From Octopus sinensis (taxonomy: Eukaryota), in the NCBI RefSeq assembly GCF_006345805.1, contig NC_043003.1, positions 38,812,001 through 38,876,000 on the forward strand: 64,000 bases of DNA. The letters run 5' to 3'. Shown piece after piece: positions 2,946 through 62,247 of the stretch. Position 1 is the stretch's first letter. Every line of letters begins with the position of its first letter. The notes below the pieces were generated by a model. That model had not been told where the DNA came from. It ran no database searches and saw nothing but the letters and a program-made list of their open reading frames with translations. The position numbers and the translations under genes are program-made.

Positions 2946-3332
2946 TATTAAAGGGCTAACCTTGTCACATTCTGTGTCACTCTGAATCTTTCTGAGAACT
3001 ATGTTAACCCTTTCAATACCAACCTGCATGAAACTGCCTCTGGTTCTGTTATACAAATGTGTTTTCAAAAGTTCGGAATTAAAATCTTCCACCAAACCTT
3101 CGTCACACTAGCTTAACTATAATAAGCTATTTTATTAAATCCTTTGTTATATTTAAAGTTAATTGAAAGAAACACAGAGCATCTCAACAGAAATATGGTA
3201 ACGAAAGTGTTAATGGGTCGTGTGCCTGTGGAGTGCTCAGCCACCTGAACATTAATTTCTTGACTGGGCTGATCAGATCAACTGGAATCCTCGTTGTCAT
3301 GACTGACAGAGTGCCAGTTATATCTCTTTACT

Positions 3333-3538
3333 CTTTTACTTGTTTCAGTCATTTGACTGTGGCCATGCTGCAGCACCGCCTTTAGTCGAGCAAATCGACC
3401 CCAGGACTTATTCTTTGAAAGACTAGTACTTATTCTATCAGTCTCTTTTGCTGAACTGCTAAGTTATGGGGGACGTATACACACCACCATCGGTTGTCAA
3501 GCAATGCTAGGGGGACAAACACAGACACACAAACATAT

Positions 3539-3589
<51 letters not shown>

Positions 3590-3750
3590 TATGACAGGCT
3601 TCTTTCAGTTTTCGTCTACCAAATCCACTCACAAGGCATTGGTCGGCCCGGGGCTATAGCAGAAGACACTTGCCCAAGATGCCACGCAGTGGGACTGAAC
3701 CCGGAACCATGTGGTTGGTAAGCAAGCTACTTACCACACAGCCACTCCTA
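3333..3750 (-). mobile_element. Full-length tRNA-derived SINE (family A) with internal (TA)n
   Basis: Minus-strand head GGAGTGGCTGTGTGGTAAG...GGTTCAGTCCC, central microsatellite, tail GGCGGTGCTGCAGCATGGCCACAGTCAAATGACTGAAACAAGTAAAAG; paralogues at 50995-51404 and 54646-55040. Confidence 0.8.
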
Positions 3751-11235: not shown

Positions 11236-12505
11236 TCAGGTCATTAAGAATGAAATGTCCAGTTTTCTTATGCACCAAACTTGACAGTAATTAACTCTGT
11301 TTTATCCTAACAATTCTTTGTTTTACAACATTGAAGAGTTACATCATCACTTTTCAAAATGCAATACATGGTGTCTGATTATATTGTGAGTTTTCTCTTG
11401 TAAATCAGTTTTTGTGAACCCATGGATAGATAAAAAATTCATGTTGTTTATGAGTTCCATCGTGGAACCAATGCATCCCAGACGTGCTCGAAACATCAAT
11501 AAGGTGTTTGGTAAAGATGTGGCAAATGAGCGTACTGTACCTCGATGGTTTGAGAAGTTCCAGTCTGGTGACTTTACTCTTGAAAATCAGCCCCATGGTA
11601 CACCTGAGACCAAGGTGGATAATGATGAGCTGAAAACTGCAGTGGAAGCAGATACATCTCAAACTACGCATGAGTTAGCAGCAAGGTTTGATGTTTCAAT
11701 TCCAACTGTATTGGACCGTCTGAAACAAATCGGCATGGTAAAGAAGCTGGACAAGTGGGTACCACATGAACTAAACGAGCATCAAATGACACATCGTCTT
11801 GAAACTTGCTGTTTTTTGCTGTCATGGTATAAAAGTGAACCATTTTTGCATCGTATTGTTACAAATGATGAAAAATGGATTCTTTTCAACAATAGCAATT
11901 ATTCTATATGGTGGTTGGATAGAGACAATGTGCCAAAACACAATCCAAAAAGAATATTCGCCAAGAAAAGCTAATGGTGTCTGTATGGTGATCCAGGACT
12001 GGTGTCATCCGCTACAGCTTCATGAGACTTGGTAAGTCAATTACAACAGATGTATACATCAACCAATTGGATGAAATGATGAGTGAATTTGCAATTAAAC
12101 AACTGAGATTGGTCAACAGAGACAGATCAATTCTCTTGCAAGACAATGTTCAACCATGCTGCACAAAGAACAGTACTTAAGTTACAGGAACTGAACCTGG
12201 AAGTACTTTGTCATCCACCGTATTCACCAGACCTTGCACCAATTGACTATAACATTTTCCAGGCATTAGAGAACTTTTTGCAAGGAAAAAACTTCAAATC
12301 TGAAGAAGATGCAAAAATGGCCTTTCATGATTTCATCACTTCTTGTTCCCCAGAATTCTTTGCTGCCTGCATATGTAAGCTACCAATAAAATGGCAAAAT
12401 TGTGTTGATAATTTAGGTGCATACTTTGATTAACTGCATTGCTTTTTGTTGCGATAAAATAAAACTTTCAGTTCAAAATTGAACATTTCATTCTTAATTA
12501 CCTGG
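11236..12505 (+). mobile_element. Full-length mariner (DD34D) transposon with frameshifted transposase, inside the last COPS3 intron
   Basis: TA-flanked ~28-bp imperfect TIRs (TCAGGTCATTAAGAATGAAATGTCC / GAACATTTCATTCTTAATTACCTGG); WVPHEL, TNDEKW and YSPDLAPIDY motifs in ORFs 11414-11974 and 12146-12433. Confidence 0.92.
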
Positions 12506-18725: not shown

Positions 18726-19772
18726 ATTATATCGAGTCAAAAGTTTTACAGTGTTTTAGTAACTTATTTGCTTTATTCGGCACATTACAACAAAAATAGC
18801 TATTTCTTTACTACCCACAAGGGGCCAAACACAGAGAGGACAAACAAGGACAGACAAACGGATTAATTTGATTATATCGACCCCAGTGCGTAACTGGCAC
18901 TTATTTAATCGACCCCGAAAGAATGAAAGGTAAAGTCGACCTCGGCGGAATTTGAACTCAGAACGTAGTGGCAGACGAAATACTGCTAAGCATTTCGCCT
19001 GCCGTGCTAACGTTTCTGCCAGCTCGCCGCCTTCTACAACAAAAATAGCGTAGCATTCAAAGTAGAAGCCCTCGTATTCCACCGTCAGAAGCCACCTTTC
19101 CACCTGTTTTTTGATCCCATGCTGATATCCATTTTTGTCTTTCGAGGCGAAGAACTCCTTCACTGAATTTTCATCCTCATCTTGGTTAATGAAGTGTCGC
19201 GAGCACAAAAAATAAAAGATGGATTGGAACGAGTAATAATCCGAGGGAGATATTTTTCTGCAACCCTAACGTGCGTAAGCAGTGGTTAAAAAAAATGGGC
19301 TAGCTTCTGGAATTTGTCGCCAAACATGGGCGTTTTGAACACAAGATAATGCTCTGCGTCTGATGGAATTATGAGGGGATAATTCACTACAAATTCGTTC
19401 CGGATGGTCGAACCATCGATGTCAACATGTACTCCGAACAGCTGGAGCGGTTGTATGCCATTGTGCGGCAAAATACCCGACATTGGTTAACAGAAAGCGA
19501 GCTCTTCCGCAGCAGAATAACGTAAGACCTCTTACCGCTCGAACAACCCGGAACGAGCTCCGGGAATTTGAGGGAATCGAATTGTTAGCACATCCAGCGT
19601 AAAATCCGTACCTCGTTCCCTCGGATTATTACTTGTTCCGATCCATGGCTCACTTCTTGCGCTTGCGTTTCATCAACCAAGAGGCCTCAACTTTGAATGC
19701 CAGACTACTTTTGTTGTAAATTGATTATAAAACAAATAAGTTTCAAAAATATTGCAAAATTTTGGCAATATA
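18726..19772. mobile_element. Two mariner 3' halves fused in inverted orientation
   Basis: Minus strand 18726-19246 encodes PSDYY..F...KEFFASK...GI....RW...VEYEGFYFE; plus strand 19247-19690 encodes KIMLCV*WNYEGIIHY...PSDYYLF; both outer ends are related TIR-like sequences. Confidence 0.65.
18801..19034 (-). mobile_element. SINE family C (Nin/Deu-like core) with 15-bp TSD
   Basis: TSD TACAACAAAAATAGC at 18786-18800 and 19035-19049; tail ...GCCCCTTGTGGGTAGTAAAGAAAT. Confidence 0.88.
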
Positions 19773-19804: not shown

Positions 19805-20018
19805 GAGCTGGCAGAATCGTTAGCGCGCTGGGCGAAATGCTTAGCGGTATTTCATCTGCCGTTACGTTCTGAGTTCAAATTCCGCCGAAGTCGACTTTAC
19901 CTTTCATCCTTTCGGGGTCGATTAAATAAGTACCAGTTACAGACTGGTGTCAATGTAATCGACTTAATCCCTTTGTTTGTGCCCTCTATGTTTAGCTCCT
20001 TATGGGCAATAAAGAAAT
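19805..20018 (+). mobile_element. SINE family C
   Basis: GAGCTGGCAGAATCGTTAGC head; tail TGGGCAATAAAGAAAT. Confidence 0.8.
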
Positions 20019-20199
20019 AAATATTCTATACATTTGATATCTCATATTTACAATAATTTCATACATCTTAAATTTCCCCTACAATATTTTTCATATTTCA
20101 TTAGGATGTCAGATAAATTTGATCGTTTTTTTTTCTACTTTATTCCTTATTTTTCATCAACAGTTTTCACAAATCAGTCAATAATATATTTTCCATTGT

Positions 20200-22439: not shown

Positions 22440-25400
22440 CATCCTAGGCACAGACGGTCTTACAATAAAACCTGAGCAAAACCTATTTATATTGGAAAGC
22501 TTAAAGATCTTGATTTGCAGGAAGCTTTCCAAGAACATCCTTCATCAATTCAGGGTCCACTTATATGAAGTAATCTACAAAAGTATATGATAGCTTTTCT
22601 GAATTATTTGGTTTTCAAAAAGCTGATAATTGGGATTTACTTGATAAAAATAATACGGAGGTAACTTTGCTACTTGAGCATAAGTCTGTGTTCAGAAAAA
22701 TCACTTCTTTAGAGTAATTTATCCTCCATTAGATGCAAAAAAGAGACGATGTGCTAAAACGAATTAAAAACAGAGGTACAGAGAGCAATAAGAAGTATGA
22801 AAAAAAGATTGTGGTGGGATTTGTCAAAAGATATTTAATCTGCTGCTGATTGCAATGATGCTAAAAAGATTTATGCTCTCATAAAAGAAAAAAAACATAT
22901 GGTCCTAAATTTGCAAGAATTACACCTTTATGCTCAAGGAATAGGGAAACATTCTTTACATCAATGGAAGCTATTGTAAGACGATGGAAGGAGAAATTTT
23001 TTAACTTCTTTATCTAAAGTTGTAATGTCACAAGTTCAAATCTCGATTAGTAAACTTAATCCTGGAAAAGTACCAGGAATAGATGGAATCGCAGCAGAGA
23101 TTTTCCAGTCTAGGGGCTACCATGTGGTAAAATTAATGCATGAAATAATTTGTGATGAATGGCCTGATGGTGTTATCCTCATTTATAAGGGGAAAGGATC
23201 ACGAGATGGATATGGTCATTCTAGAGGAATTACACTCTTATCCTCTACCGGCAAAGTACTTTCTGAGGTTCTCCTTGCACGATTAAACGATGAGATTTCA
23301 CCAAATGTTCTCTCAGAGTCTCAGACCAGATTCTTAGACCAAATCAAGAGATCATGGATATGATGTGTTCTGTAAGTCAGGTGCAAGAAAAATGTCAAGA
23401 GCAAAATCTAGATTTAGTCCAGGTTTTTGCTGATTTGACAAAGGCGTTTGATACAGTGGCTCGGCATGCATTATGGGAAGTTTTGCGTAAGTTTAGCTGC
23501 TCAGTACATTTCGTGAACATGATAAAATCTTTTCGTGATTACATGGACGTGTTTGCTAATGTTGGAGGAGTTCTTTCAGAATCTTTTAAAGTGGTAAATG
23601 GAGTAAAGCAGGGAGATATTCTTGGACCGACGATGATTTCTCTATATTTTTCGAATATGCTTGCAAATGCATTCAAAGATTGCAGGGAGGCGTATATATT
23701 CATTATAGAAGCACCGATAAATTATTTAATTTGGGAAGATTGTCAGCAAAACAAAGACGTTTATTTAGCTAATAAAATTTATTGTGCAGATGATTGTGAC
23801 TTGGTAACCCATTCAATGAGAGACATGCAGCACCTGAATCCAGTATGCCCTTTGGGCTGACAATAAGTTTGGATATAACTGTTGTTATGTTTCAACCAGC
23901 GTCCAACTCATACGAGGAAATACCCAAAAAATAACTGGAAACGTTCTGTGTGGGACAAGCCCATTGTAGTTCAGGCTTCTGCCATTAGGAGCTACCTGAG
24001 GCAAACTTCAGACATTAGTAAACCGATCGGCGTCGTCGAGTCAAGTCGTACTACCACGTGGTACGTCTTTGTTTTGCAGTGCTTCCGTTCATCGGAACTG
24101 TTCATCGATTTTTGCGATGACTGAAACGAAGGAACAACGTGCTTCAGTGAAACTCTGTTCTCTGCTGGTGCAAACGGCGACCGAAACAGTTGTCATGCTT
24201 TAAACAGCTTACAAGGACGCTGCCATGATCAAAACACAGGTTTATGAGTGGCTTTCACGCTTTAGGAATGGTCACTTGTCTCTTGAAAACCAACCTCATT
24301 CAGAGCAACCATCAACCTCCCGAACGAATGAAAAGCATCATGAAAATTTATGAACTGATCTTGGAGGACCATCAGCAAACAAATAATGAATTTGTTGATA
24401 TGATTGGTGTGTCCTAGAGCTCCTGCCAACGAATTTTGAGCGGGGATTTGCGAATGAAAAGAGTTGCAGCAAAATTTGTGTCTCGCTTGCTCACGGAACA
24501 TCAAAAGCAGTCATGACTGAATGCATGTCGTGGACGAAAGAACAGCTGGAAGTTGATCCGGGCTTTTTTTCGAAGGTCATTAATGGTGACGGAAGCTGGT
24601 GCTATGGAATTTGTAGATGTAGAAGAGGTGAAGAAGAAAAACGACGGAGTCATTAAAAGCATCACATTACCAGAGTTTCAAGACTGCTTCGAACAGTGGA
24701 AAACGCGTCTGAATCAATTCATTGCATCTAATGGAGAATACTTTGAAGGCGATAAAAGTGTAAACATGGAAAATTAAGTGACTAAAATAATATTGTAAAA
24801 TTCCGGTTTCTTTTGGGTATCCCCTCGTATTATGAACCTGAGATTTTTTTTCAAAACACGAAACTGAATGATGTGGATAAATTTACATATCTTGAAAGTG
24901 TGCTGGATCGGGTTTGTTCTATAGATGATGAAATGGCGAACCGTCTTCAAAAAGCATCTCACGCTTTCAAGAATTTTTGAAGGGCGAGTTTGGTCTAATA
25001 GAGATATTACCAGAAACACAACTGTTACAGTGTACAGAGCTTGTGTGCTTTCATACCTTTTTGCCTCATGTGAGACACGAATAGTATATAGGAAGTATCT
25101 AAAATTACTCGAGCGATTTCATCAGTGATGTTTGTGCACAAAATACCGGATTCTGAAGTAATTGTATGTGCTGGTGTGGATGACATTGAAACTGAAATTC
25201 ATTGACGTAGATTTCGCTGGATTGGCTACTTGGTTAGGGAATCTGTTCAACGCATGCCCAAACATCTACTATATGGTCAGATAAAAGGAGCAAAGAGACC
25301 TCAATGTAAATCAAAAATGCATTTCAAAGTAAGTCTCTAAAGAATTTCAAAATGATGCATGCAAACTGGGAGAGCGATGCAGTGAGCCGAGCAAAATGCA

Positions 25401-40786: not shown

Positions 40787-41011
40787 TTAAAGGGGGCAGA
40801 TATTATTTGATATAGCTGAAAGTGTGTTTTTCCAATGTAAACACCAGTAAACACTTTCTTTATAGATGTTGACAAATGCGTGTTTGGAAAAAAGGATAAA
40901 TAGTTGTTCGTCCGTACAAAGAGGGCAAAAAGATCTTGACAAAATTTTCCAGTCCAAAGAAAATTGCTTATTACAGTCTTTGAGATGCCAAATTAGTTTA
41001 CTAAAACACAC
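40787..41011 (-). pseudogene. Penelope-like element GIY-YIG endonuclease C-terminal remnant
   Basis: FSKLIWHLKDCNKQFSLDWKILSR..CPLCTDEQLFIL....VN..KE....CLH resembles the LSKYIW.LK......W.IL....C.LC..EK......N.R.E...CRH signature. Confidence 0.55.
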
Positions 41012-41178
41012 CGATGCTGGTGTGTTTACGTTCCCGTAACTTAGCGGTTCGGCAGAAAGAGATCGATAGGATAAGTACTAGGCTTACAAAGAATAAGTCC
41101 TGGGTCGATTTGCTCGACTAAAGGCAGTGCTCCAGCATGGCCGCAGTCAAATGACTGAAACGAATAAAAGAATGAAAG

Positions 41179-43150: not shown

Positions 43151-43443
43151 GCTTACTTTGTTTAACGCTGAGTTAAGTAGATGGTCTAATGAAGCAGAGG
43201 TCAAAAAAGGGTGAGACAGAACTTTGGAACACAGAATTTCTGTCTCCGGCTTAGATGAAATGATGATAACGAGCTTGAGAGCAAGAACAACAAGAAAACG
43301 AGCTGTGATCCACTGTAAAGATTTCGAACGTTTAGCAGATCTGTTTTTGTCATGGCTTTCTATCACATGCACATTAAAATAAATGTACGTATACTATGTA
43401 TTTAGTTTTTCTGGACAAGATATTTTGTTTCTGTCAATCAGAC

Positions 43444-43529
43444 TGTTATGATGAGAGTTACGATGCCCCCTTGCGAGAGATAGACTAGTCCGAGTAAAGT
43501 ATAAATAGTAACGAGCCGAGTGAGTTCGA
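43444..43529 (+). promoter_or_regulatory. U3 part of the 5' LTR with TATA box
   Basis: Starts TGT right after the TSD; TATAAATA at 43500-43507, 30 nt upstream of AGTTCAG (43530). Confidence 0.75.
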
Positions 43530-45254
43530 AGTTCAGACTCGTTATTTTTATTTTTTTTATTTTTTATTTATTTTTTTTTTTTGAGTGAGTTATTTGGAGT
43601 TATTCTGATGTTTTGTTTCGAGTGAAGAGGTTGTGAGTTCGAGTTCGTTGGAGGACGTGGAATAATTTTTTTTCTTGAAAATGCAAGAGCAGACTTACGC
43701 GCGAGCGGCAGGCAGAGGCTTGGTTGACGGTGAGCTGGAGATGGAGGAGGTGGTGGTCGAACAAAAGACTTGCAAAGTATTTCGACAGTTTAAAGAGGGA
43801 GGGTGACTGTGTGATAGTCACACCGTCCGAGGAGGAGGAGCAGTGCAGAGAAGCGTACTATAACGTACAGGACGTGGTGTGTGGAGTCGAAAAAAATTGA
43901 AGTAGCGGAAATGGCAGAAGAAGTAGAAAGGTGTCTGAAGGAAATTGAGGGTGACCCACATTTTTCAAAAGAGGAAGGAAAGTATGCCACGGTGGTGGTA
44001 TATTTTGAAACAGAAAATGAGGCAAAAAAAACGCAACAAGACTTTTGAAATCGGATAAGTGGACTTTGCCACAGTGTCTGCGAAGGAGAGCAGTGAGGAT
44101 GAGAATCCATAGAATCTCACCCGAATTTAATATGGAAAGGTTGCTGCAGCAGTGCTGTTTAACTGCAAGGATGATGTGGAGGTACTGAAGGTGGAGAAGT
44201 CAGCGGAGGTGAAATGTGGTGGGGATATACGGTGCAGTTCTGGCACACATAACCGTGCGAGACCTGTACAACATCCCGGAGGAGCTGGTCTACCCTGACG
44301 AGACACGGCTCCGAGTTTGGGTAGAGGGAAGACCCCCAATTTGCTACAATTGTAAATCGAGGGGCCACATGAAAGATGTGTGCCCGCGGGAAAAAACAAA
44401 AGCACCAGAGGTTGTGATAGAGGATGTAAAGACCGTGTGTGGAGGAGCGAAAGCGGAGGAATACGAATGGAGGAGCAGTTAAGTGAGAAGAACGAGCGAG
44501 TGCAGAAGAGGAAAAAACAGAAGACGGAAGAGGTCAAGGGTGGAATCACCACCGAAAGATCAAAAAAAGAAAAAAATCAAAAGCAAGATAGCAGAAGAGA
44601 GAGAAGAGAAAACATACAAAGAAGGATAAAGAGAAGGCGAGAGAGCGGCCAAGGACAGAGTTTGAACAAGAATGGGAGACGAAGTGAACGAGCAATTGGA
44701 ATCGTGTAAATATGGAAGAAGGCCTACAGGAAAAACTTGAAGGCAGTTGTGATGTATATCAAGAATACAGAAGTGAGAAGAGACTTGTAGGTAAGAAAGG
44801 GTTGGTCAGGGTGAAGGTGAACCAAAACTGTATGGTGACGACGTGAAAGGCGTCATTATAGACAAAGAGACATATATAAAATTAAAAAAGATGTTTAATG
44901 CTATGCATATAACGCATTATGTGCGGTATGATAAATTGCCAGATGTTATAGACCAAACGGACCTATTGGATTATATGACGGACGAGCGTCTAATGTAGAA
45001 TTGTAATTGTAAAATTGTATAATGTTAACATGTAAATTTGTAAATTGAACTGAAATATATTAACTGTGAAATTGTATTGAATATATGAAATGTAAATTGT
45101 ATTTTAAACGGAACTGCGAGTTGGGGGTTCGTAAGCCGTTCCATCTCATTACATATAATTCATTTTACTTCATATTTTTTTTTACTTTATGTACCCCATG
45201 TCCCGTCTTGTAATGTCCCCTTCTTCGTGGCCCCTTTGTGGGTAATAAAGAAAT
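43530..45254 (+). mobile_element. Cassette A1: ORF1-only zinc-knuckle retroelement (1725 bp)
   Basis: Begins AGTTCAGACTCG, ends GTGGGTAATAAAGAAAT; roughly 95% identical to A2 by eye. Confidence 0.85.
43681..44998 (+). pseudogene. A1 ORF (ORF1p/Gag-like CCHC protein) with many 1-bp indels
   Basis: MQEQTYARAAGRG... to ...DYMTDERLM*; VEGRPPICYNCKSRGHMKDVCP retained. Confidence 0.85.
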
Positions 45255-47001
45255 AGTTCAGACTCGTTATTTTTTTTGAGTGAGTTATTTGGAGTTGTTC
45301 TGGTGTGTTTGTTTCGAGTGAAGAGGTTGTGAGTTCGAGTTCTTTGGAGGACGTGGAATAATTTTTTTCTTGAAAATGCAAGAGCAGACTTACGCGCGAG
45401 CGGCAGGCAGAGGCCTGGTTGACGGTGAGCTGGAGGTGGTGGTCGAACAGAAGACTTTACAAAAGTATTTCGACAGTTTAAAGAGGGAGGGTGACTGTGT
45501 GATAGTCACACCGTCCGAGGAGGAGGAAAGCAGTGCAGAGAAGCGTACTATAACGTACAGGACGTGGTGTGTGGAGTCGAAAAAAATTGAAGTAGCGGAA
45601 ATGGCAGAAGTAGAAAGGTGTCTGAAGGAAATTGAGGGTGAACCCACATTTTTCAAAGAGGGAAGGAAGTATGCCACGGTGGTGGTATATTTTGAAACAG
45701 AAAATGAGGCAAAAAGAACGCAACAAGACTTTTGAAATCGGATAAGTGGACTTTGCTACCAAGTTACTGCGGAAGGAGGGCAGTGAGGATGAGAATCAAT
45801 AGAATCTCACCCGAATTTAATATGGAAAGGTTGCTGGCAGCAGTGCTGTTTAACTGCAAGGATGATGTGGAGGTACTGAAGGTGGAGAAGTCAGCAGAGG
45901 TGAAGTGGTGGGGATATACGGTGCAGGTCCTGGCACACATAACCGTGCGAGACCTGTACAACATCCCGGAGGAGTTGGTCTACCCTGACGAGACTCGGCT
46001 CCGAGTTGTGGTAGAGGGAAGACCCCCAATTTGCTACAATTGTAAATCGAGGGGCCACATGAAGGATGTGTGCCCGCGAGAAAAAACAAAAGCACCAGAG
46101 GTTGTGATGGAGGAGTGTAGAGATGCGTGTGTGGAGGAAGCGAAAGCGGAGGAAGCACGAATGGAGGAGCAGTTAAATGAGGAAGAACGAGCAAGTGCAG
46201 AAGAGGAAAAAACAGAAGACAGGAAGAGATCAAGGGTGGAATCACCACCGAAAGATCAAAAAAAGAAAAAAATTAAAAGCAAGATAGCAGAAGAGAGAGA
46301 AGAGAAAACATACAAAGAACAGGAAGTAAAAGAGAAGGCGAGAGAGCGGCCAAGGACAGAGTTTGAACAAGAATGGGAGACAAGAGTGAACGAGCAATTG
46401 GAATCGTGTAAATATGGAAGAAGGCCTACAGGGAAAAACTTGAAGGCAGTTGTAATGTATATCAAGAATACAGAAGTGGAAAAGAGACTTGTAGGTAAGA
46501 AAGGGTTGGTCAGGGTGAAGGTGAACCCAAAACTGTATGGTGACGATGTAAAAGGCGTCATTATAGACAAAGAGACATATATAAAATTAAAAAAGAATTT
46601 TAGTGCTATGCATATAACGCACTATGTACGGTATGATAAATTACCAGATGTGATAGATCAAACGGACCTATTGGATTATATGACGGACGAGCGTCTAATG
46701 TAAAAGAATTAGAATTGTTAATTGTAAAATTATTTGATGTAAAGTTGTGTTTTGAACAGGAATATATGTAATGTTAACACGTAAAATTGTAAAATTATTG
46801 TAACTGTAAAATTGTATTGGAATATATGAAATGTACAATTGTATTTTAAACGGAACTGCGAGTTGGGGGTTCGTAAGCCGTTCCATCTCATTATATATAA
46901 TTCATTTTTTACTTCATATTTTATTTTTTTATTTTATGTACCCCATGTCCCGTCTTGTAATGTCCCCCTCTTCGTGGCCCCTTTGTGGGTAATAAAGAAA
47001 C
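45255..47001 (+). mobile_element. Cassette A2: ORF1-only zinc-knuckle retroelement (1747 bp)
   Basis: Begins AGTTCAGACTCG, ends GTGGGTAATAAAGAAAC. Confidence 0.88.
45376..46703 (+). CDS. A2 protein (~442 aa if one frameshift near 45720 is restored): RRM-like region, CX2CX4HX4C knuckle, charged linker, unassigned C-terminal domain
   Basis: ORFs 45370-45735 and 45732-46703 overlap; knuckle CYNCKSRGHMKDVC at 46032-46073; the VEGRPP.C context resembles Tx1/L1-clade ORF1p (ZCCHC3-like); no RT or endonuclease. Confidence 0.8.
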
Positions 47002-48660
47002 AGTTCAGACTTCGGAGTCGTTGTTATTGAACGCGCGTGAAATTGTAAGTAGGAAAAATTGTTGTACGTTTGTTGATACGGTTTCGTGTTATACTGTTTC
47101 TGTTCTGGCGGCCGTTGTCTGTCTGTGTGAGACAGACAAGAGGATATGGACGACCCCTCCCTGATGGAAGAGTCGGAGGAGGAATAGTTGTTCGAGACCT
47201 TGTCAGAAGCATCGACTTCTGAGGACGAGCTGATCGGCGCTGTGAATAATATGGATATTAAAACCGGGAAGACGTCCGCTGGAGCTGCAAAAAAGAAGAC
47301 GACAGAGGAAAAGGAGATTAACCTAGAAAAATTGCCAGGTTTTCAAGCTTACATAACTAAAGTAGGTGGTGAGGTAAAACTACTTCCACCAGAGAAACGA
47401 GAAGAATGGTTTATGAAAAGGATTATAAAATACCGGACATATGGAAAAGATAACAGGAAAGTAGAAATAATGAAAATGGAAGATATTGAGGAGGCGCTGA
47501 GAAGAGAGAAGGAAGAAATCACATTCATGACAAGAGGAAACGAGTTCGGAACCATAATAGTGCAGTTCGAAAGCAAAAATATAGCAAGGAAAATGGCAAC
47601 GAAGACAATAAAAACTGAAAAAGTAATATTATTACCCTCCTACATGAACCAAAGAATAAATAGAATAAGAGTTGAAGGGATACCCCACCCCACATTGAGG
47701 GTGAATGGGTCGTCGCGGCGATCATAAAAGATGTGGAAGAAGAGACAAACATTTTACAAGCGACCGTAAAAAATGAAGGTTTACGTGGCAAAACGCTAGA
47801 GATGAGCGTTCAAGCAGAGGAGGGTGCACTGGAGAAGATGGCGGACAGCATAATTTTGGGGAATATAGTAATGAGAGTGTGGGTGGAGGGCAGAGCACCA
47901 AGGTGCTATAAGTGTGGCCTGAGGGGGCCACATAAGAGCCTACTGCCCTCCCCCACAAAAAGAAACAGTGATCCAGGAAGAGGAGGAGACGGAGCCGGAA
48001 AAAGTTGAGGAGGAAGAATCTGAGGAGGAGAAGGAGGCCCAAACTGAGTGGGAAGACGTAAGGAAAAAAAGAAAAAGGAAAGTGAACTTTATCGAACCCC
48101 AATCCACCCCAACACCACCCGCACCCTCTGAGCCCCATCCTTCCCCTGCAAACAAAGATCCCACCCACTCCCCGCCTACATGAAAACCTAAAAACGCAGA
48201 CATACAGAGTAAACAAGAGCCCAAGTCCCATTTTTTATGTTTTGTAAAAAAAAAAGGAAGACAATGAGAACTCAACAAGATTCTTTGGTAAAGAAGCATG
48301 GTATGAGGGAGAAGATGGGAGTTACTTGGTGGTGGAAGGTGAAGTAATGGACATAAGGAAGATGTGTGTAAATGAAGGTGTAAAAGCGATTGAGGTGGAA
48401 TTTTCGAATGAGAAGATAAGAGTATGAAAGGATATTTGAGAAAGTGATAAGAAAAGAGGGACTTTTGATTGGAGATGATAGGTGACGAAGGGTTGACAAG
48501 GACAGGTAAGTGGTGTTGGCGGATGGGGCCGTCAGCATCGCTTTCATATTATCATTATCATTCTAAAAATTCATTCTCCATACTATTAATTATAATGTTC
48601 TATGTCCCCAATGTCTTGTGGTGTCCCCTCTGTGTCGCCCCTAGTGGGTAATAAAGAATT
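47002..48660 (+). mobile_element. Cassette B: diverged ORF1-only zinc-knuckle retroelement (1659 bp)
   Basis: Begins AGTTCAGAC, ends AGTGGGTAATAAAGAATT; protein homologous to A, DNA not obviously alignable outside the ends. Confidence 0.85.
47146..48183 (+). pseudogene. B ORF (~345 aa reconstructed), CCHC zinc-knuckle protein with one stop and two homopolymer frameshifts
   Basis: ATG 47146, TAG 47185; ...GTIIVQFES...LLPSYMNQR..IRVEGIP / WVVAAII...RVWVEGRAPRCYKCGLRG / HIRAYCP..., acidic and Pro-rich tail. Confidence 0.8.
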
Positions 48661-48835
48661 AGTTCAGAGTCGAGTGAAGTACGTGTTATTTCGCAGTGAA
48701 GTCGGAAGGTGTCGGTTGGTTAGTTAACAAAGAATATTGATTGTTAGTTCGTAAAGAGATTTGTTAGTTTGTTAAATTGTTTTTATTATTGTCTGGTTAT
48801 CTTATTTATTGTACATAACAAATTACGTTACAACA
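48661..48835 (+). repeat. R-U5 part of the 5' LTR
   Basis: Starts AGTTCAGAGTCG, ends TTACAACA; 48684-48835 aligns with 50394-50530. Confidence 0.85.
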
Positions 48836-48837
48836 TC

Positions 48838-48856
48838 TGGCGACAAGGGTTTCGAA
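48838..48856 (+). promoter_or_regulatory. Primer-binding site (tRNA-Arg-like, tentative)
   Basis: TGGCGACAAGGG.TTCGAA 2 nt after the LTR end; resembles the complement of a tRNA-Arg(TCG) 3' end with a short gap. Confidence 0.6.
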
Positions 48857-48905
48857 TCTCACGTAGATTATTTAACAATTTTTTCATGATACAACTTGTT
48901 AAATA

Positions 48906-50393
48906 ATGGAAGACCTATCAGCTTCCATAGTACAGTTGCAAAAGCAACAACAAGAGCAGCAACAAGAATTGCGGAAGAAACTATAACAGCAACAACAATT
49001 ATTGAAGCTATATTAAAAAAAGTCCAAAAATGAGTTAAGTTCGTTTTCGCCAGACGGTGTTTCGAACTTGATTAATGAATTCAGTTATAACCCAGAGGTG
49101 GGTATAACTTTTATATCGTACTACAGAAGGTACGATGAGGTTTTTAAATAAGATTGCAAATCATGGTCGGACGAACAAAAAGTGAGATTGTTATTCCGAA
49201 AATTTGCTCCGTTAGAGCATGAACGTTACTATAATTTCATATTGCCCAAAAAAACCTAATGAAATTTGTTTTAAAGAAACAATAGAATTACTGTGCAACA
49301 TATTCAGCGATAAAACTTCTCGTTAACACTGAAGTGTTGAAATATACCGAAAAAAAAGAGAATGATGATTTTATCACATACACAAGAACTGTCAACAGGA
49401 TGTGTGAAAGTTTTAAGTTCAAAGAACTTACACCCGAGATGTTCAAGTGTTTTATTTTCGTACAAGGCCTTACAGCAAGCGAAGATACAGAAATTTGGGC
49501 AAGAATTCTTTCTAAATTGAAACAAGCGAACTAAGATCTAACCTTACAGTCCCTAGCTGAAGAATGCCAAACGATGGTAAACCTGAAACACGATGTAGAA
49601 AAAATTCAAGTAAAGGATTCTTCAAAAATACAGATATGCTGACCGGAAAAGTACAAACCCCACCCCCAAAAAAGCGCCACGTCCTAATCCATGTTATGGA
49701 TGTGGGGGTGTACATTTCAGAAAAGACTGTTCATTTAAAAATAATAAAAAAACGTTACAGTTGCAAAAGAACTGGTCACCAGAGTTCACACTGCAGAACA
49801 AAATTACGAAGGTCAAACGTTAAAAATCTTAGAGAGCTCTCAGCAGAAACAAAAATCAACTCCCACATAAGAAAATTCGTACACGTAAAAATAAATGGAA
49901 ATTCATATTAAACTTCAACATGATATTGGAAATGAGATTTCAATAATAAATATAGACACATGGAAGAAAATAGGGAAACCTATGTTGAGAAAAACAGCGA
50001 AATCTGCTCCTAACGTGACGGACGACAAATTACATTTCTTAGACGAAATGTGGACTGATGTCACATTTCGGAGGAAAACATTCAAGGCGAAAGTCTTCAT
50101 CGTTAAAAATGCAACCGATCTGTTGGGTACCGATGGTTAGAATTTTTTGATTTATAGGATCTTCCCATAAATCTCTCTTGTAAAAACGTAGATGGTTGTT
50201 CCTCTAAAAATAATTCGTCTGAAGAGTTAAAGAGAAAATTTAAAAAAATATTTTCGCAACTACTCTTGGACAAACTAGGTCTATGCACAAAGGCTGAAGC
50301 ATGTTTTGAATTAGATGATAACAGTCACCGTTGTTCAAGCCTAATAGGAAAGTGCCTTCTGCGGCAATAAAGCAAGTGGACGTTGAGTTGGAC
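48906..50393 (+). pseudogene. Gypsy gag-protease remnant, truncated at the start of RT
   Basis: Poly-Q N-terminus, FSYNPEVG.TF..YYRRY..VF, KFKELTPEMFKCFIFVQGL, knuckle CYGCGGVHFRKDC, degenerate protease LQHDIGNEISIIN...W.KIGKP, then PLFKPNRKVP; multiple stops and frameshifts. Confidence 0.85.
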
Positions 50394-50530
50394 TGTTAGT
50401 TCGCAGTGAAGTCGGAAGGTGTCGGTTGGTTAGTTAACAAGGAATATTGATTGTTGGTTCGTTAAGAGATTTGTTAGTTCGTTACATTGTTTTTATCTCA
50501 TTTATTGTACGTAACAATTACGTTACAACA
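50394..50530 (+). repeat. 3' LTR remnant (distal R/U5 only)
   Basis: Aligns to 48684-48835 with about 8 substitutions and one indel; followed by the TSD. Confidence 0.85.
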
Positions 50531-50730
50531 CAGACGATGCACCATAGTCTTGCCATTAACCTTCAGTAAAATGGAACTAATTTTCGAGTGTTAATTGGTA
50601 AATATGCACATCGCCATTGGTGGGAGTATTATTTATTTAATTGTAGCTTGGCCAAGCTTCACGAACATTAACATACGAAGTGGTACCAAAAAGTTCCCAG
50701 ACTAGTTTTGTAGCACGCCAACAGATGGCA

Positions 50731-50935
50731 GCACACCGGGCGAAATGCTTAGCGGTATTTCGTCTGCATTACGTTGTGAGTTCAAATTCCGCCGAGGTCG
50801 ACTTTGCCTTTCATCCTTTCGGGGTCGATAAATTAAGTACCAGTTACGCATTGGGGTCGATGTAATCGACTTAATACCTATGTCTGTCCTTGTTTGTCCA
50901 TTCTGTGTTTAGCCCCCTGTGGGTAATAAAGAAAT
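50731..50935 (+). mobile_element. SINE family C (5'-truncated)
   Basis: Core GGTCGACTTTGCCTTTCATCCTTTCGGGGTCGATAAATTAAGTACCAG; tail GCCCCCTGTGGGTAATAAAGAAAT. Confidence 0.85.
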
Positions 50936-50994
50936 AGGTTGCATGCACAGTTAGAGCTAGCGGTGATCTTCATGAGGCTGTGTGCCGAGTGACA

Positions 50995-51404
50995 TTCTTT
51001 TTCTTTTTCTTTTTTTTACTTGTTTCAGTCATTTTGACTGCGGCCATGCTGGAGCACCGCCTTTAATCGAGCAACTCGACCCCGGGACTTATTCTTTGTA
51101 TGCCCAGTACTTATTCTATCGGTCTCTTTTGCCGAACCGCTAAGTGACAGGGACATAAACACACCAGTATCGGTTGTCAAGCAATGCTAGGGGGACAAAC
51201 ACAGACACACAAACACACACATACATATATATATACACACATATATACGACAGGCTTCTTTCAGTTTCCGTCTACCAAATCCACTCACAAGTCATTGGTT
51301 GGCCCGGGGCTATAGCAGAAGACACTTGCCCAAGATGCCACGCAGTGGGACTGAACCCAGAACCATGTGGTTGGTTAGCAAGCTACTTACCACACGGCCA
51401 CTCC
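50995..51404 (-). mobile_element. SINE family A
   Basis: Close paralogue of 3333-3750. Confidence 0.85.
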
Positions 51405-54645: not shown

Positions 54646-55226
54646 TTTACTCTTTTACTTGTTTCAGTCATTTGACTGTGGCCATGCTGGAGCACCGCCT
54701 TTAGTCGAGCAAATCGACCCCACAACTTATTCTTTGTAAGCCTTGTACTTTATTCTATCGGTTTTTTTGCCGAACTGCTAAATTACGGGGACGTAAACAC
54801 ACCAGAATCGGTTGGCAAGCGATGTTGGGGGACAAATATAGACACACAAACATACAAACACACACACACACATATATATACATATATACACATATATACG
54901 ACAGGCTTCTTTCAGTTTCCGTCTACCTACTCCACTCAGAAGGCTTTGGTTGGCCCGAGGCTATAGTAGAAGACACTTGCTCAAGGTGCCCGGAACCATG
55001 TGGTTCGTAACCAAGCTACGTACCACACATCCACTCCTACGCCTATATTCTGAAAGTTGTTCTATTTACGTGTCAGGTTTTCTGAGTTCAAATTCTGCTG
55101 AGGTCGACTTTGCCTTTCATCCAATCGGGGTCAATAAATTAAGTATCAGTTGCGTACTGGAGTCGATCTAATCGACTGAGCCCCTCCCCCAAAATTTCGG
55201 GCCTTGTGCCTAGAGCGGAAAAGAAT
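54646..55226. mobile_element. SINE family A (minus, 54646-55040) followed by a family C fragment (plus, 55070-55226)
   Basis: Match to the copies above. Confidence 0.75.
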
Positions 55227-60400: not shown

Positions 60401-60505
60401 TGTCACTCATATAAGGTAGCGATTATCAGTGTTTTTATTGTAACATCATCACTAGATGTATCATTAATAAGCTCATGTGGAGGAGGAGGATCCATCCCTT
60501 TCCTT

Positions 60506-60565
<60 letters not shown>

Positions 60566-60567
<2 letters not shown>

Positions 60568-62247
60568 TTTCTTTTCTTCTTTCAAATTTGGTTCCATTTC
60601 TTGCCGAGTGTCTTCCCGACTCCTAGGGCAAAGAAACTCATAGTATACATTGGTAGGCCATTAAACCAAACTCAATAGTTCGTTCATTTTATTTATTTAT
60701 TTTTTTTAAAGTTAAATTAAAATACATGAGCAGCAACAGTTCTCACATCGACAATGCTCTTCTCAATACGTGTGATGTACCAGTTAAGACAATCTTTTGC
60801 ACTTCTTGCAGGGATGGTAAGCCAGGGATCATTCTCATATAATTTTCGGTTCCCTTCTTGATCATTCCTAGTGCTCCTACGATCACTGGTATTGTAACCG
60901 CCTTGAGATGCCACATTTTCTCAATTTCAATGAGTAGGTCTTTATATTTTCTGAGCTTGTCAAACTCTTTCGCTGAGATATTATGATCACAGGGGATGCT
61001 CATGTCGATCAATAAGCAAACTTTATTGTTTTGGCCTTTCACAACAATATCTGGTTTATTGGCCTTGATGGTTCGGTCTGTATGTACTGGAAAGTCCCAC
61101 AGAATGGTTACATTTTCTCCTTCAGTTACAGCCTCAGGGTGGTGATTATACCACTTGTCGGCAGTTTTGATATTGTAATGCCGACTTATTAGCCAGTGGA
61201 GATATTGGCCAACTCTGTCATGTCTTAATTTATACTCCACTGGTGCTAAGACTTTACATCCAGAGATTAGGTGGTCCACTGTTTCAATCATGTCGTTGCA
61301 GAATCGGCATTTTGGGTCTGCTCTATTTTTCATCACATTGGCCTGGTAGTTCCGGGTTAATAGGCTTTGATCTTGAGCAGCCAGGATGAAACCTTCGCTC
61401 TCTGCTTTTAGCCCTGAGCTCCGTAGCCACTGATGGGTTTGCTTCTGGTCAACATCAGCTTGTTTGCTGCGGGTCACATATTTGCCGTGCAGAGGTTTCT
61501 CCTCCCACCTATCAGCCAATTGCTCGTGCGCTTTTTTCGTTGCCATCATTTTCACCTTCTTTGCAACAATAGTTGCCGTACTTCCCTTGGGTTGTTCAGT
61601 TTGGGTATCCTGCACGAGATCAATAGCAAATTTTTTGCTTTCCTTTATAATAGAATGAAGCTTCTTTCGTCTCTCGTGATTTTCCACGAGCTTTAGCATC
61701 CAGTCATTCGATATTTCGAGATATTTGGCCAGTCCAATTGTGGTTGTTTTGTAAGCTAGTTCAAATTGGATCAGGCCTCGACCTCCTTGGGCTCTGGGAA
61801 GGTAAAGGCGATCTACGTCTGCCTTTGGGTGGTGCATCCTATTACAACTCAGCAGCTTGCGTATTTTCCTATCTATATTCTTTACTTCACTCATATTCCA
61901 GTTCAACACATTGTAGCTATAAGTAACAACTGGAACTGCTAAGGAATTTATAGCTAACACCTTGTTACGTGCATTTAGTTCAGATTTCAGGACTGCACGA
62001 ACTCTCCTATAACATTCCTTCCTGATCTTCTCTTTCATGCTTGCATGCTGAATACCAGAGCCTTCATTTATCCCTAAATATTTGTATGTTTGTTCTTGCT
62101 CAAGCTCTCTTATGACTGTGTAAACATCTAACACGACTGAATTTGTGGTCTTCACTTTCCCTTTCTGGAAAGTGGCCTTGGCACACTTCTCAAGTCCAAA
62201 CTCCATCCCGATGTCATCGCTGAATGCTTTCACGGTGCGCAAAAAAA
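60566..62247 (-). mobile_element. 5'-truncated Dong/R4 non-LTR retrotransposon in a (TAA)n microsatellite
   Basis: (TAA)n on both sides; uninterrupted frame 60743-62242. Confidence 0.9.
60743..62242 (-). CDS. Dong/R4 ORF C-terminal half: RT thumb, CCHC finger, restriction-like endonuclease (no native start codon)
   Basis: FSDDIGMEFGLEKCA, YKYLG, RLYLPRAQGGRGL, CRFC...ETVDHLISGC, RHDRV, KPDIVV...LIDMSIP...KLRKY. Confidence 0.9.
   Translation of the reverse strand: MRTVKAFSDDIGMEFGLEKCAKATFQKGKVKTTNSVVLDVYTVIRELEQEQTYKYLGINEGSGIQHASMKEKIRKECYRRVRAVLKSELNARNKVLAINSLAVPVVTYSYNVLNWNMSEVKNIDRKIRKLLSCNRMHHPKADVDRLYLPRAQGGRGLIQFELAYKTTTIGLAKYLEISNDWMLKLVENHERRKKLHSIIKESKKFAIDLVQDTQTEQPKGSTATIVAKKVKMMATKKAHEQLADRWEEKPLHGKYVTRSKQADVDQKQTHQWLRSSGLKAESEGFILAAQDQSLLTRNYQANVMKNRADPKCRFCNDMIETVDHLISGCKVLAPVEYKLRHDRVGQYLHWLISRHYNIKTADKWYNHHPEAVTEGENVTILWDFPVHTDRTIKANKPDIVVKGQNNKVCLLIDMSIPCDHNISAKEFDKLRKYKDLLIEIEKMWHLKAVTIPVIVGALGMIKKGTENYMRMIPGLPSLQEVQKIVLTGTSHVLRRALSM

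What the first reader, a model, noticed from the sequence alone, without database searches (positions are those of the whole stretch)
43444..50530. Candidate new system: ORF1-only zinc-knuckle retroelements arrayed at the transcription start site inside a gypsy LTR
Seen directly: TSD CAGAC - U3 with TATA (43444-43529) - [AGTTCAGACTCG cassette A1] - [AGTTCAGACTCG cassette A2] - [AGTTCAGAC cassette B] - AGTTCAGAGTCG R-U5 - PBS - gag-pro - 3' LTR remnant - CAGAC. Removing 43530-48660 restores a ~260-bp LTR. Each 1.66-1.75-kb cassette has one ORF (RRM-like region + CCHC knuckle), no RT, endonuclease or integrase, and the same 3' tail. Established precedents cover only parts: HAL1 (ORF1-only L1 derivatives), HeT-A (gag-only head-to-tail arrays relying on an upstream promoter), and Tx1L/Tx2L (LINEs that target another transposon). 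Inference: a non-autonomous family that inserts at the LTR U3/R boundary, borrows the LTR promoter, and separates the host element's own genes from it. That would make it a parasite, or possibly a restrictor, of LTR retrotransposons. I know of no description of this combination, but I cannot search the literature.
Basis: partly seen in the sequence, partly recalled or inferred. Interest (0 to 1): 0.92.

Follow-up and report, generated by a model that had tools for sequence, protein, structure and literature searches.

The report
ORF1-only LINE copies nested in LTR
Three dead copies of a short octopus retrotransposon that keeps only the first gene of its parent LINE sit head to tail inside the LTR of a broken LTR retrotransposon; this is a nested transposon pile-up of a known kind, and there is no evidence for a new anti-LTR system, although why all three sit at one 10-base site is not explained.

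Summary
A 5-bp duplication (CAGAC) flanks an LTR element whose 5' LTR is split, about 30 nt after a TATA box, by three same-strand cassettes: A1, A2 and B. A 10-nt sequence, TTCAGA(C/G)TCG, lies at every junction.

The cassettes are ORF2-less, ORF1-only derivatives of an octopod L1-superfamily LINE, analogous to mammalian HAL1. Their ORF has about 180 relatives, mostly Octopus and Argonauta proteins. In Argonauta hians and Octopus vulgaris the same ORF1 is followed by an endonuclease/reverse-transcriptase ORF2. Those full LINEs end in the same ~50-nt 3' tail, which the abundant tRNA-derived SINE also carries.

Eight related octopod loci show solo copies, 5'-truncated copies or head-to-tail arrays. 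Their target duplications are 6-19 bp and unrelated to each other, and none lies in an LTR. Head-to-tail arrays recur in this LINE lineage.

The claim that this family is dedicated to LTR start sites is therefore not supported for the family as a whole. It could not be tested for A and B in their own genome. The repeated 10-mer, and the similarity of the A 5'UTR to the LTR core promoter, are more than chance. They leave room for site re-use, homing or reverse-transcriptase strand transfer. All copies are degenerate.

The parts
43439..43443 (.). Left copy of the 5-bp target duplication (CAGAC) of the LTR element
   Evidence: Read directly. Identical to 50531-50535.
43444..43531 (+). U3-like 5' part of the 5' LTR. 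Starts with TG and carries TATAAATA at 43500-43507.
   Evidence: No second copy in the window. The assignment rests on the duplication, the TG start and the TATA box about 30 nt before 43530-43535.
43532..43541 (+). Junction 10-mer T1, TTCAGACTCG
43542..45256 (+). Cassette A1. ORF1-only LINE derivative, heavily frameshifted. Ends ...GGGTAATAAAGAAATAG.
45257..45266 (+). Junction 10-mer T2, TTCAGACTCG
45267..47003 (+). Cassette A2. ORF1 runs 45376-45732 and then 45732-46703, with one frameshift. 3'UTR and tail follow.
47004..47020 (+). Double junction: TTCAGAC (47004-47010) followed by TTCGGAGTCG (47011-47020)
   Evidence: The only junction with one and a half copies of the 10-mer.
47021..48662 (+). 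Cassette B. Divergent ORF1-only subfamily, at least four disruptions. Tail ends ...GGGTAATAAAGAATTAG.
   Evidence: Its relative in L004 is 66-73% identical at the DNA level.
48663..48835 (+). Rest of the 5' LTR (R-U5-like). Begins with T4, TTCAGAGTCG, and ends ACAACA.
48838..48855 (+). Primer-binding-site-like TGGCGACAAGGGTTTCGA, two nt after the LTR
   Evidence: Read directly. The matching tRNA was not identified.
48856..50385 (+). Degenerate gag (two CCHC knuckles), aspartic protease and the first residues of reverse transcriptase of the LTR element. The rest of pol is deleted.
   Evidence: The one homologue found, P0155 (35% identity), has DUF7083 and Asp_protease_2.
50386..50530 (+). 3' LTR remnant. 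Lacks the U3-like part and about the first 18-20 nt after the junction site.
50531..50535 (.). Right copy of the 5-bp target duplication (CAGAC)
50730..50937 (+). tRNA-derived SINE copy carrying the same 3' tail as the cassettes
18800..19023 (-). SINE copy with the same tail. Target duplication CTATTTTTGTTGTA.
19807..20020 (+). SINE copy with the same tail. Target duplication (A)ATATTC.

Best explanation
A1, A2 and B are dead copies of two subfamilies of an ORF2-less, ORF1-only derivative of an octopod L1-superfamily LINE. Each unit is a 5'UTR, an ORF1 and a 3'UTR. The ORF1 has RRM-like domains, one CCHC knuckle, a charged helical linker and a conserved C-terminal domain. The 3'UTR ends in a ~50-nt tail, ...GCCCCTTGTGGGTAATAAAGAAATAG.

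The same tail closes the full-length LINEs of this lineage and the abundant tRNA-derived SINE. The inferred mechanism is therefore that the partner LINE's ORF2 protein recognises the tail and copies the cassettes in trans by target-primed reverse transcription.

The cassettes lie head to tail in the 5' LTR of an old, internally deleted LTR retrotransposon. They sit at the site AAG^TTCAGA(G/C)TCG, about 30 nt after the LTR's TATA box.

I read the 10-mer at each junction as the target duplication of a first insertion that was then used again. This could happen by new insertions into a regenerated copy of the site. It could also happen by the reverse transcriptase jumping between RNAs that carried the 10-mer at an end. 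Head-to-tail array building is a habit of this LINE lineage and does not show a dedicated LTR-targeting system. The placement at the probable start site does cut the LTR promoter off from gag-pol, but that is a consequence and is not shown to be a function.

Shown: the identity of the cassettes, the shared tail, the existence of autonomous relatives, dispersed relatives with unrelated duplications, and arrays elsewhere. Inferred: mobilisation in trans, the order of events, and the way the site was re-used.
For: Relatives of the ORF:
- An exhaustive search with the A2 ORF gave 180 relatives at E<=1e-3 and 40 at E<=1e-10.
- Of the 20 top-150 hits whose source was looked up, 15 are Octopus bimaculoides, O. 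sinensis or Argonauta hians proteins and 5 are unnamed ENA or Logan sequences; they share one architecture and have no reverse-transcriptase domain of their own. A further look-up added two O. vulgaris proteins.

Autonomous relatives:
- A. hians locus L037 has ORF1 followed by ORF2 with Exo_endo_phos, RVT_1 and zf-RVT. It ends ...GCCCTTGTGGCGAATAAAGAAATG and has a 16-bp target duplication.
- O. vulgaris locus L040 holds a full LINE with the tail ...GGCCCCTTGTGGGTAATAA....
- A distant relative's ORF2 is closest to human L1 ORF2p, E 2e-27.

The tail:
- Alignment of cassette, SINE and LINE tails shows about 50 conserved nt.

ORF1-only relatives moved as units to ordinary sites:
- L004 is a B-like copy with a 19-bp duplication inside a SINE.
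- L003 has a ~16-bp duplication in an intron.
- L002 is 5'-truncated.
- L006 and L039 are single copies within their ~20-kb loci; their ends were not read.

SINE duplications are all different.

Arrays without an LTR:
- L001 has three cassettes of two subfamilies, the first 5'-truncated.
- L040 has at least three full LINEs at 99-99.6% identity with direct tail-to-head joins.

Structure and precedent:
- The model has a beta-alpha-beta-beta-alpha-beta fold before the knuckle. Its best fold matches are RRM domains, but they are weak.
- Non-LTR reverse transcriptases make head-to-tail products by template jumping (PMC11371274).
Against: - The partner machinery shows no target specificity. Two or three independent hits on one phosphodiester bond are therefore very unlikely by chance, and the re-use mechanism is not demonstrated.
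- Arrays in L040 join tail to head with no spacer repeat, unlike the window. The 10-mer could therefore be the cassettes' own 5' end and not a duplication.
- The A 5'UTR shares three further 9-10-mers with the LTR between -14 and +17 (p about 0.01). This hints at a specific A-LTR relationship that this explanation does not need.
- The A2|B junction carries one and a half copies of the 10-mer, which simple re-use does not predict.
- No other copy of A, B or this LTR could be examined.
Confidence: 0.6

Rival explanations
1. The A and B subfamilies, though not the whole family, home to the transcription start sequence of this LTR family. Their transcripts would start at, and read through into, TTCAGA(C/G)TCG. 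The read-through 3' end would anneal to the nicked target, as in R2- or SART1-type precise insertion. Every insertion would then land at the U3/R boundary, regenerate the site and use the LTR promoter.
For: - The 10-mer is at all four junctions and nowhere else in 238 kb (the 64-kb window plus 174 kb of other octopod DNA).
- A2's tail is followed by an extra TTCAGAC before B's own copy. This looks like 7 nt of 3' read-through from a source that was also followed by the site.
- The A 5'UTR contains GAGTGAGTT, GTGAGTTCGA and TCGAGTGAAG, which cluster around the LTR start.
- The tail's AATAAA would place RNA 3' ends 10-25 nt downstream, inside the 10-mer.
Against: - Zero of eight related loci are in an LTR.
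- The nearest B relative (L004) sits in a SINE with a different 19-bp duplication and a different 5' end.
- SINE and LINE copies with the same tail show no target preference.
- B's 5'UTR shows nothing significant beyond the 10-mer.
- There is only one locus, and no transcription data.
Confidence: 0.2
2. The array was acquired inside the LTR element's own particle. Cassette RNAs that begin, and by read-through end, with the LTR's first 10 nt were co-packaged. During minus-strand synthesis the strong-stop DNA transferred serially across them before reaching the genuine 3' R. The array would then be built exactly between U3 and R and copied into both LTRs before integration.
For: - It explains the exact U3|array|R placement without any site-specific nuclease.
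- It explains why every unit, including the LTR element's own RNA, starts with TTCAGA.
- The whole composite has integrase-type ends and a 5-bp duplication.
- The double 10-mer at A2|B fits one blunt end-to-end jump among homology-guided ones.
Against: - The 3' LTR region that would test this is deleted.
- It requires co-packaging of RNAs that lack the element's packaging region.
- It still needs an earlier event that put cassettes behind an LTR start site.
- No poly(A) is seen at the junctions.
Confidence: 0.1
3. An ordinary coincidence followed by local rearrangement. One or two random insertions happened to hit the LTR. A1/A2 then arose by slippage or unequal exchange between the flanking 10-bp duplications. 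The site has no special meaning.
For: - A1 and A2 are each other's closest relatives (4.8% substitutions) and share identical flanking 10-mers.
- The region is a dense pile of transposons.
Against: - B and A are different subfamilies, so at least two independent events hit the same bond.
- Ten bases is little homology for unequal exchange.
- The A 5'UTR similarity to the LTR promoter is unexplained.
Confidence: 0.1

Closest known systems
HAL1 (half-L1) of mammals
   Same: A non-autonomous derivative of a LINE that keeps only ORF1 and depends on the parent's ORF2 protein. HAL1 arose several times independently (PMC5753468). Here too several ORF1-only subfamilies coexist with full-length relatives.
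   Different: The parent is an invertebrate L1-superfamily LINE. Its ORF1 has RRM-like domains plus a CCHC knuckle, unlike the mammalian ORF1 with coiled coil, RRM and C-terminal domain. Recognition goes through a specific ~50-nt tail without poly(A), which a tRNA-SINE shares. Copies tend to form head-to-tail arrays.
HeT-A of Drosophila telomeres
   Same: A gag-only non-LTR element found in head-to-tail arrays, with each unit's expression depending on sequence upstream of it (my own knowledge).
   Different: HeT-A arrays are terminal and are added to chromosome ends. This array is internal and bounded on both sides by the two halves of one LTR. Relatives are dispersed with target duplications.
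Site-specific LINEs (Tx1L in Tx1D, R1/R2 in rDNA, SART1/TRAS in telomeric repeats)
   Same: A non-LTR element found at one exact sequence inside another repeat, with the target regenerated at each side. Some of these use read-through RNA ends to align on the target (my own knowledge; PMC7265360 was listed).
   Different: Those families are at their target in nearly all copies. Here relatives and tail-sharing SINEs are at unrelated sites.
LINE-SINE pairs with a common 3' tail (Ohshima and Okada)
   Same: The SINE, the full LINE and the cassettes end in the same tail. This is the classic signature of recognition by one reverse transcriptase.
   Different: Here a protein-coding ORF1-only element uses the same tail alongside the SINE.
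Template-jump concatemers made by non-LTR reverse transcriptases (R2 protein)
   Same: Head-to-tail tandem copies produced when the enzyme moves from the 5' end of one RNA to the 3' end of another (PMC11371274). This fits L001 and L040.
   Different: It has been shown for R2-type enzymes in vitro and in cells, and has not been shown for this lineage. The window's junction 10-mers need an extra assumption.

Membership tests
ORF1-only (HAL1-like) non-autonomous LINE derivative | Encodes a homologue of the ORF1 protein of an autonomous LINE | tested here: met
   The A2 ORF matches P0035 (E 1.4e-11) and the P0037 type. In L037 and L040 these lie directly upstream of an endonuclease/reverse-transcriptase ORF2.
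ORF1-only (HAL1-like) non-autonomous LINE derivative | No ORF2 (endonuclease or reverse transcriptase) | tested here: met
   Pfam finds only zf-CCHC. The ORF1 stop is followed by about 300 nt of 3'UTR and the tail. Units are 1.66-1.75 kb against 5.3 kb for the full LINE.
ORF1-only (HAL1-like) non-autonomous LINE derivative | Shares the 3' end with the autonomous partner | tested here: met
   Alignment of 12 tails from cassettes, SINEs and full LINEs.
ORF1-only (HAL1-like) non-autonomous LINE derivative | Amplified as a unit, with copies flanked by target duplications | tested here: met
   L003 (~16 bp) and L004 (19 bp) are complete ORF1-only units at unrelated sites. For the window copies the flanking 10-mer is ambiguous.
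HAL1 in the strict sense (mammalian L1 clade) | Derived from mammalian L1, with an ORF1 of coiled coil, RRM and C-terminal domain | tested here: not met
   Octopod origin. The ORF1 has a CCHC knuckle. Relatives' ORF2 is L1-like by best match, but the clade was not resolved.
Site-specific non-LTR retrotransposon | Nearly all copies lie at one target sequence | tested here: not met
   Relatives: eight loci, none in an LTR; the four related elements whose duplications were read, plus four SINEs, all have different targets. For subfamilies A and B themselves this could not be tested, because the source genome cannot be searched.
Site-specific non-LTR retrotransposon | The same target duplication at every copy | tested here: inconclusive
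   The window's three copies all abut TTCAGA(C/G)TCG, but this is a single locus.
HeT-A/TART-type telomeric array | Array at a chromosome end, with units joined by their 3' ends to the terminus | tested here: not met
   The array is bounded by both halves of one LTR and lies inside a 64-kb window of ordinary repeats.
Ty3/gypsy LTR retrotransposon (the host element) | LTRs with TG...CA ends, a short target duplication, and a primer-binding site next to the 5' LTR | tested here: met
   TG at 43444, CA at 48834-48835 and 50529-50530, CAGAC on both sides, TGG... at 48838.
Ty3/gypsy LTR retrotransposon (the host element) | Pol domain order protease, reverse transcriptase, RNase H, integrase, and gypsy-type reverse transcriptase | not testable with these tools
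   Pol is deleted after its first residues. The only homologue found is a 1.9-kb gag-protease contig. BEL/Pao is not excluded.
RRM-containing ORF1 protein (type with RRM plus CCHC) | RRM fold next to the zinc knuckle | tested here: inconclusive
   The model (pLDDT 79.9) has a beta-alpha-beta-beta-alpha-beta unit at residues 15-94. The best fold matches are RRM domains, but only at E 7e-3 to 0.1. Pfam finds no RRM.

The most novel reading that the evidence does not exclude
Subfamilies A and B may have become specialised passengers of one LTR retrotransposon family. Under this reading their RNAs start and end with the LTR's first 10 nt. That would let them either home to the U3/R boundary by annealing of the RNA end, or be stitched in during the LTR element's own strong-stop transfer. 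In both cases they would take over the LTR promoter and silence the host element. This would be a LINE-derived parasite of an LTR element that works by mimicking R.
Probability: 0.2. Interest if true: 0.7.

Novelty: new member of a known kind. Interest (0 to 1): 0.35.

Why it matters
The finding documents a diverse, amplified class of ORF1-only LINE derivatives in octopods. They share one 3' tail with a full L1-superfamily LINE and with the most abundant octopus SINE, and they tend to build head-to-tail arrays. That is useful for annotating cephalopod repeats, and it is an invertebrate parallel to HAL1. If the minority reading were right, it would be a rare case of one retroelement class exploiting the terminal redundancy or promoter of another. 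As the evidence stands, this is a nested-transposon relic.

Tried and rejected
- The word-indexed protein search with the A2 ORF found nothing. A family alignment as query returned only one low-complexity hit. The exhaustive search was needed.
- An exact look-up of the A2 ORF found nothing on record.
- A metagenome DNA scan for the tail followed by AGTTCAGA gave 29 hits, all chance matches in microbial contigs.
- A search with the LTR element's gag-protease gave one 1.9-kb contig at 35% identity. No related LTR, and so no empty site, could be fetched.
- The joined flanks of the whole composite found no empty paralogous site. Only SINE hits came back.
- Rfam at gathering and at E<=1 found no ribozyme or other RNA family in the region.
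- 5'UTR alignments between subfamilies were too divergent to fix the native 5' ends.
- The similarity of B's leader to the LTR beyond the 10-mer is not significant.
- Dating by LTR divergence against A1/A2 divergence is not resolvable, because only about 135-145 nt of LTR can be compared.
- A literature search for the tail sequence and for octopus ORF1-only elements found no description.
- L038 turned out to be an unrelated organism.

Full report
**1. Observation**

- CAGAC at 43439-43443 and at 50531-50535 flanks an element that starts with TG at 43444 and ends with CA at 50530.
- An 88-nt segment (43444-43531) carries TATAAATA at 43500-43507.
- Three same-strand units follow. Their bodies are A1 (43542-45256), A2 (45267-47003) and B (47021-48662).
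- Each unit ends in ...GGGTAATAAAGAA(A/T)(T/C)AG.
- Each unit is preceded by TTCAGACTCG (43532 and 45257) or by TTCAGAC plus TTCGGAGTCG (47004-47020).
- After B, TTCAGAGTCG (48663) opens a 173-nt segment that ends ACAACA at 48835.
- A TGG-type primer-binding site starts at 48838.
- Next come a frameshifted gag with two CCHC knuckles, an aspartic protease and the first residues of reverse transcriptase.
- At 50386 a 145-nt remnant begins. It matches 48684-48835 at 85% identity over 152 aligned columns including gaps. In a global alignment the two differ at 16 of 145 aligned positions, fewer by eye once the doubtful first ~13 columns are left out.

Joining the two LTR halves gives 261 nt. The 12-mer AGTTCAGA[CG]TCG occurs only at the three junctions in 64 kb, where 0.26 matches are expected. 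The exact 10-mer is absent from 174 kb of other octopod DNA that I fetched.

A1 and A2 differ by 4.8% substitutions and 30 indels. B shares only the last ~59 nt with A at the DNA level. It is homologous at the protein level: 32% over 80 aa, and 54% over 26 aa at the knuckle. By eye on the three-frame translation, none of the three has an intact reading frame.

**2. What the cassettes are**

Pfam sees only a CCHC knuckle. The fast protein search found nothing. The exhaustive search with the 323-aa A2 ORF found 180 relatives, 40 of them below 1e-10.

Thirty of the top 150 hits were looked up. Seventeen are uncharacterised proteins of Octopus bimaculoides, O. sinensis, O. vulgaris or Argonauta hians, one has no organism named, and the rest are unnamed ENA or Logan sequences. 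The window is therefore octopod DNA, which fits its SINEs. The relatives that were read share one architecture:
- an N-terminal RRM-like region;
- a second RRM-like unit that ends in ...VVEGRxPxCxxCGxxGHxxxxCP;
- a charged linker;
- a conserved C-terminal domain.

An AlphaFold model (pLDDT 79.9) shows a beta-alpha-beta-beta-alpha-beta unit, then the knuckle, a long helix and a C-terminal alpha/beta domain. Its best fold matches are RRM domains, though they are weak.

In A. hians (L037) the homologous ORF1 is followed by an ORF2 with Exo_endo_phos, RVT_1 and zf-RVT. The element has a 16-bp target duplication and ends ...GTGCCCTTGTGGCGAATAAAGAAATG. In O. vulgaris (L040) a 5.28-kb unit has ORF1, the same kind of ORF2 and the tail ...GGCCCCTTGTGGGTAATAA.... 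A distant relative from a marine metagenome has an ORF2 closest to human L1 ORF2p, at 2e-27.

The cassette ORF is therefore a LINE ORF1. The cassettes keep the 5'UTR, the whole ORF1, the 3'UTR and the tail, and they lack ORF2.

**3. The tail**

The last ~50 nt of A1, A2 and B align with the ends of three tRNA-derived SINE copies in the window. They also align with SINEs in O. sinensis and with both full LINEs. Sharing a tail among a LINE, a SINE and now an ORF1-only element is the classic sign that one reverse transcriptase recognises all of them. No poly(A) follows the tail.

**4. Where relatives sit**

I could fetch eight octopod loci through annotated relatives.

| Locus | Species | What is there |
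|---|---|---|
| L004 | O. sinensis | Complete B-like unit (66-73% DNA identity) inside a SINE, 19-bp duplication CAGAAAYGTTAGCACGCCG |
| L003 | O. sinensis | Complete unit in an intron, ~16-bp duplication |
| L002 | O. sinensis | 5'-truncated copy |
| L006 | O. sinensis | Single copy in the locus |
| L039 | O. vulgaris | Single copy in the locus |
| L037 | A. hians | Solo full LINE |
| L001 | O. bimaculoides | Three cassettes of two subfamilies head to tail, the first 5'-truncated |
| L040 | O. vulgaris | At least three full LINEs head to tail, 99-99.6% identical, tail joined directly to the next 5' end |

None of these loci is in an LTR.

SINE duplications are CTATTTTTGTTGTA, GTATTTCTA, GTTATGATGTTTC and ATATTC. 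The machinery therefore has no visible target specificity. Head-to-tail arrays recur in this lineage without any LTR.

One caveat applies. These loci were reached through annotated genes, so they are biased towards copies with open frames.

**5. The junction 10-mer**

Three readings are possible, and I could not separate them.

(a) It is the target duplication of an insertion at AAG^TTCAGAGTCG, and the site was then re-used. The family's duplications range from 7 to 19 bp. Several relatives begin with an oligo-T run right after their duplication (L037, L003), as A does after the 10-mer.

(b) It is the cassettes' own 5' end, so that the array is a plain tail-to-head concatenation as in L040. 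In favour of this, the A 5'UTR shares GAGTGAGTT, GTGAGTTCGA and TCGAGTGAAG with the LTR between -14 and +17. The probability is about 0.012 against dinucleotide shuffles and 0.001 against random window segments. B shows nothing significant beyond the 10-mer.

(c) It served as a short R-like homology for strand transfer.

The A2|B junction is odd. It has TTCAGAC and then TTCGGAGTCG. This looks like 7 nt of read-through carried by the A2 RNA, placed next to B's own copy of the site.

Because the machinery is not site-specific, two or three independent hits on one bond are not credible as pure chance. Some form of re-use, homing or template switching is needed.

**6. Mechanism**

I commit to the following.

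- The cassettes are HAL1-like ORF1-only derivatives, copied in trans through the shared tail. I have high confidence in this part.
- They entered an LTR by target-primed reverse transcription and grew into an array through the lineage's array-forming behaviour at a regenerated 10-nt site. I have moderate confidence in this part.

Non-LTR reverse transcriptases are known to make head-to-tail products by template jumping (PMC11371274).

The rivals are homing of A and B to the LTR start sequence through read-through RNA ends, serial strong-stop transfer inside the LTR element's particle, and coincidence followed by local duplication. The 3' LTR segment that would tell insertion after integration from acquisition before integration is deleted. 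Divergence dating is not resolvable either.

**7. Comparison and novelty**

HAL1 is defined as a non-autonomous L1 derivative that encodes only ORF1p, and it arose several times (PMC5753468). The octopod cassettes work like HAL1. They are not HAL1 in the strict sense, because the clade, the ORF1 architecture and the tail-dependent recognition all differ.

They resemble HeT-A in being gag-only and arrayed, but they are not terminal. They resemble site-specific LINEs only at this one locus.

I found no paper describing them. I could not consult Repbase or Dfam. An octopus LINE study reports RTE and Dong elements and does not report this lineage (PMC9115989).

I file the finding as a new member of a known kind. 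About 0.2 probability remains that A and B have a specific relationship with this LTR family.

**8. Limits**

- The source genome, other A and B copies, empty LTRs and transcription starts were out of reach.
- 'Gypsy' is unverified, because pol is missing.
- The start site at about 43530 is inferred from TATA spacing alone.

Noticed in passing
L040:4445-19184 (O. vulgaris OX597840.1): At least three head-to-tail copies, 99-99.6% identical with a 5.28-kb period, of a full LINE (ORF1 plus endonuclease/reverse-transcriptase ORF2). The tail joins directly to the next unit's 5' end. The array runs into an assembly gap. The annotated protein from this array (P0037) is named 'EPM2A-interacting 1-like'.
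   Followed up: partly
L001:9965-14588 (O. bimaculoides CM046605.1): Mixed array of three ORF1-only cassettes from two subfamilies. The first is 5'-truncated. Assembly gaps hide two of the junctions.
   Followed up: partly
window 43530-45254 compared with 45255-47003: Of the 30 indels between A1 and A2, 18 are single-base gaps in A1 and 14 of those are a G present in A2 and missing in A1. This is an odd bias that could reflect assembly error or a mutational bias.
   Followed up: no
window 51014-51250, 3324-3749, 54647-54898, 41006-41171: Copies of a second abundant octopus repeat (containing ...GACTGCGGCCATGCTGGAGCACCGCC...), usually followed by CA/TA microsatellite. It is also present in L001, L002 and L040.
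   Followed up: no
window 60743-62242 (- strand) and 60500-60560: LINE ORF2 C-terminal fragment (zf-RVT) whose 3' end carries an (ATT)n run. This is a different LINE lineage from the cassettes' partner.
   Followed up: partly
window 11414-11974 and 23354-23860: A mariner-type HTH ORF (HTH_48, HTH_Tnp_IS630) and a separate reverse-transcriptase fragment (RVT_1). The window is a dense transposon pile with no obvious host gene.
   Followed up: no
L007:3-6158 (marine metagenome contig, unknown animal): A distant relative of the same ORF1 family. The end of one ORF2 (zf-RVT) is followed about 890 nt later by ORF1 and ORF2 of a second copy, so LINEs stand in tandem here too.
   Followed up: partly
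window 44000-48000: Strong purine excess on the + strand across the cassettes (GC skew +0.31 to +0.34, AT skew +0.18 to +0.25). It reflects the Glu/Lys/Arg-rich ORF1 linker.
   Followed up: no
window 50380-50400: The internal deletion of the LTR element joins the reverse-transcriptase start to position about +18 of the LTR's post-TATA part, across a short shared TGTTA. It removes exactly the segment that would show whether the 3' LTR also carried cassettes.
   Followed up: partly
SINE body, e.g. window 50810-50830; L006 at 23028 (- strand): The tRNA-derived SINE contains TTCGG(G/A)GTCG internally, one or two mismatches from the junction 10-mer. This is probably coincidence.
   Followed up: no
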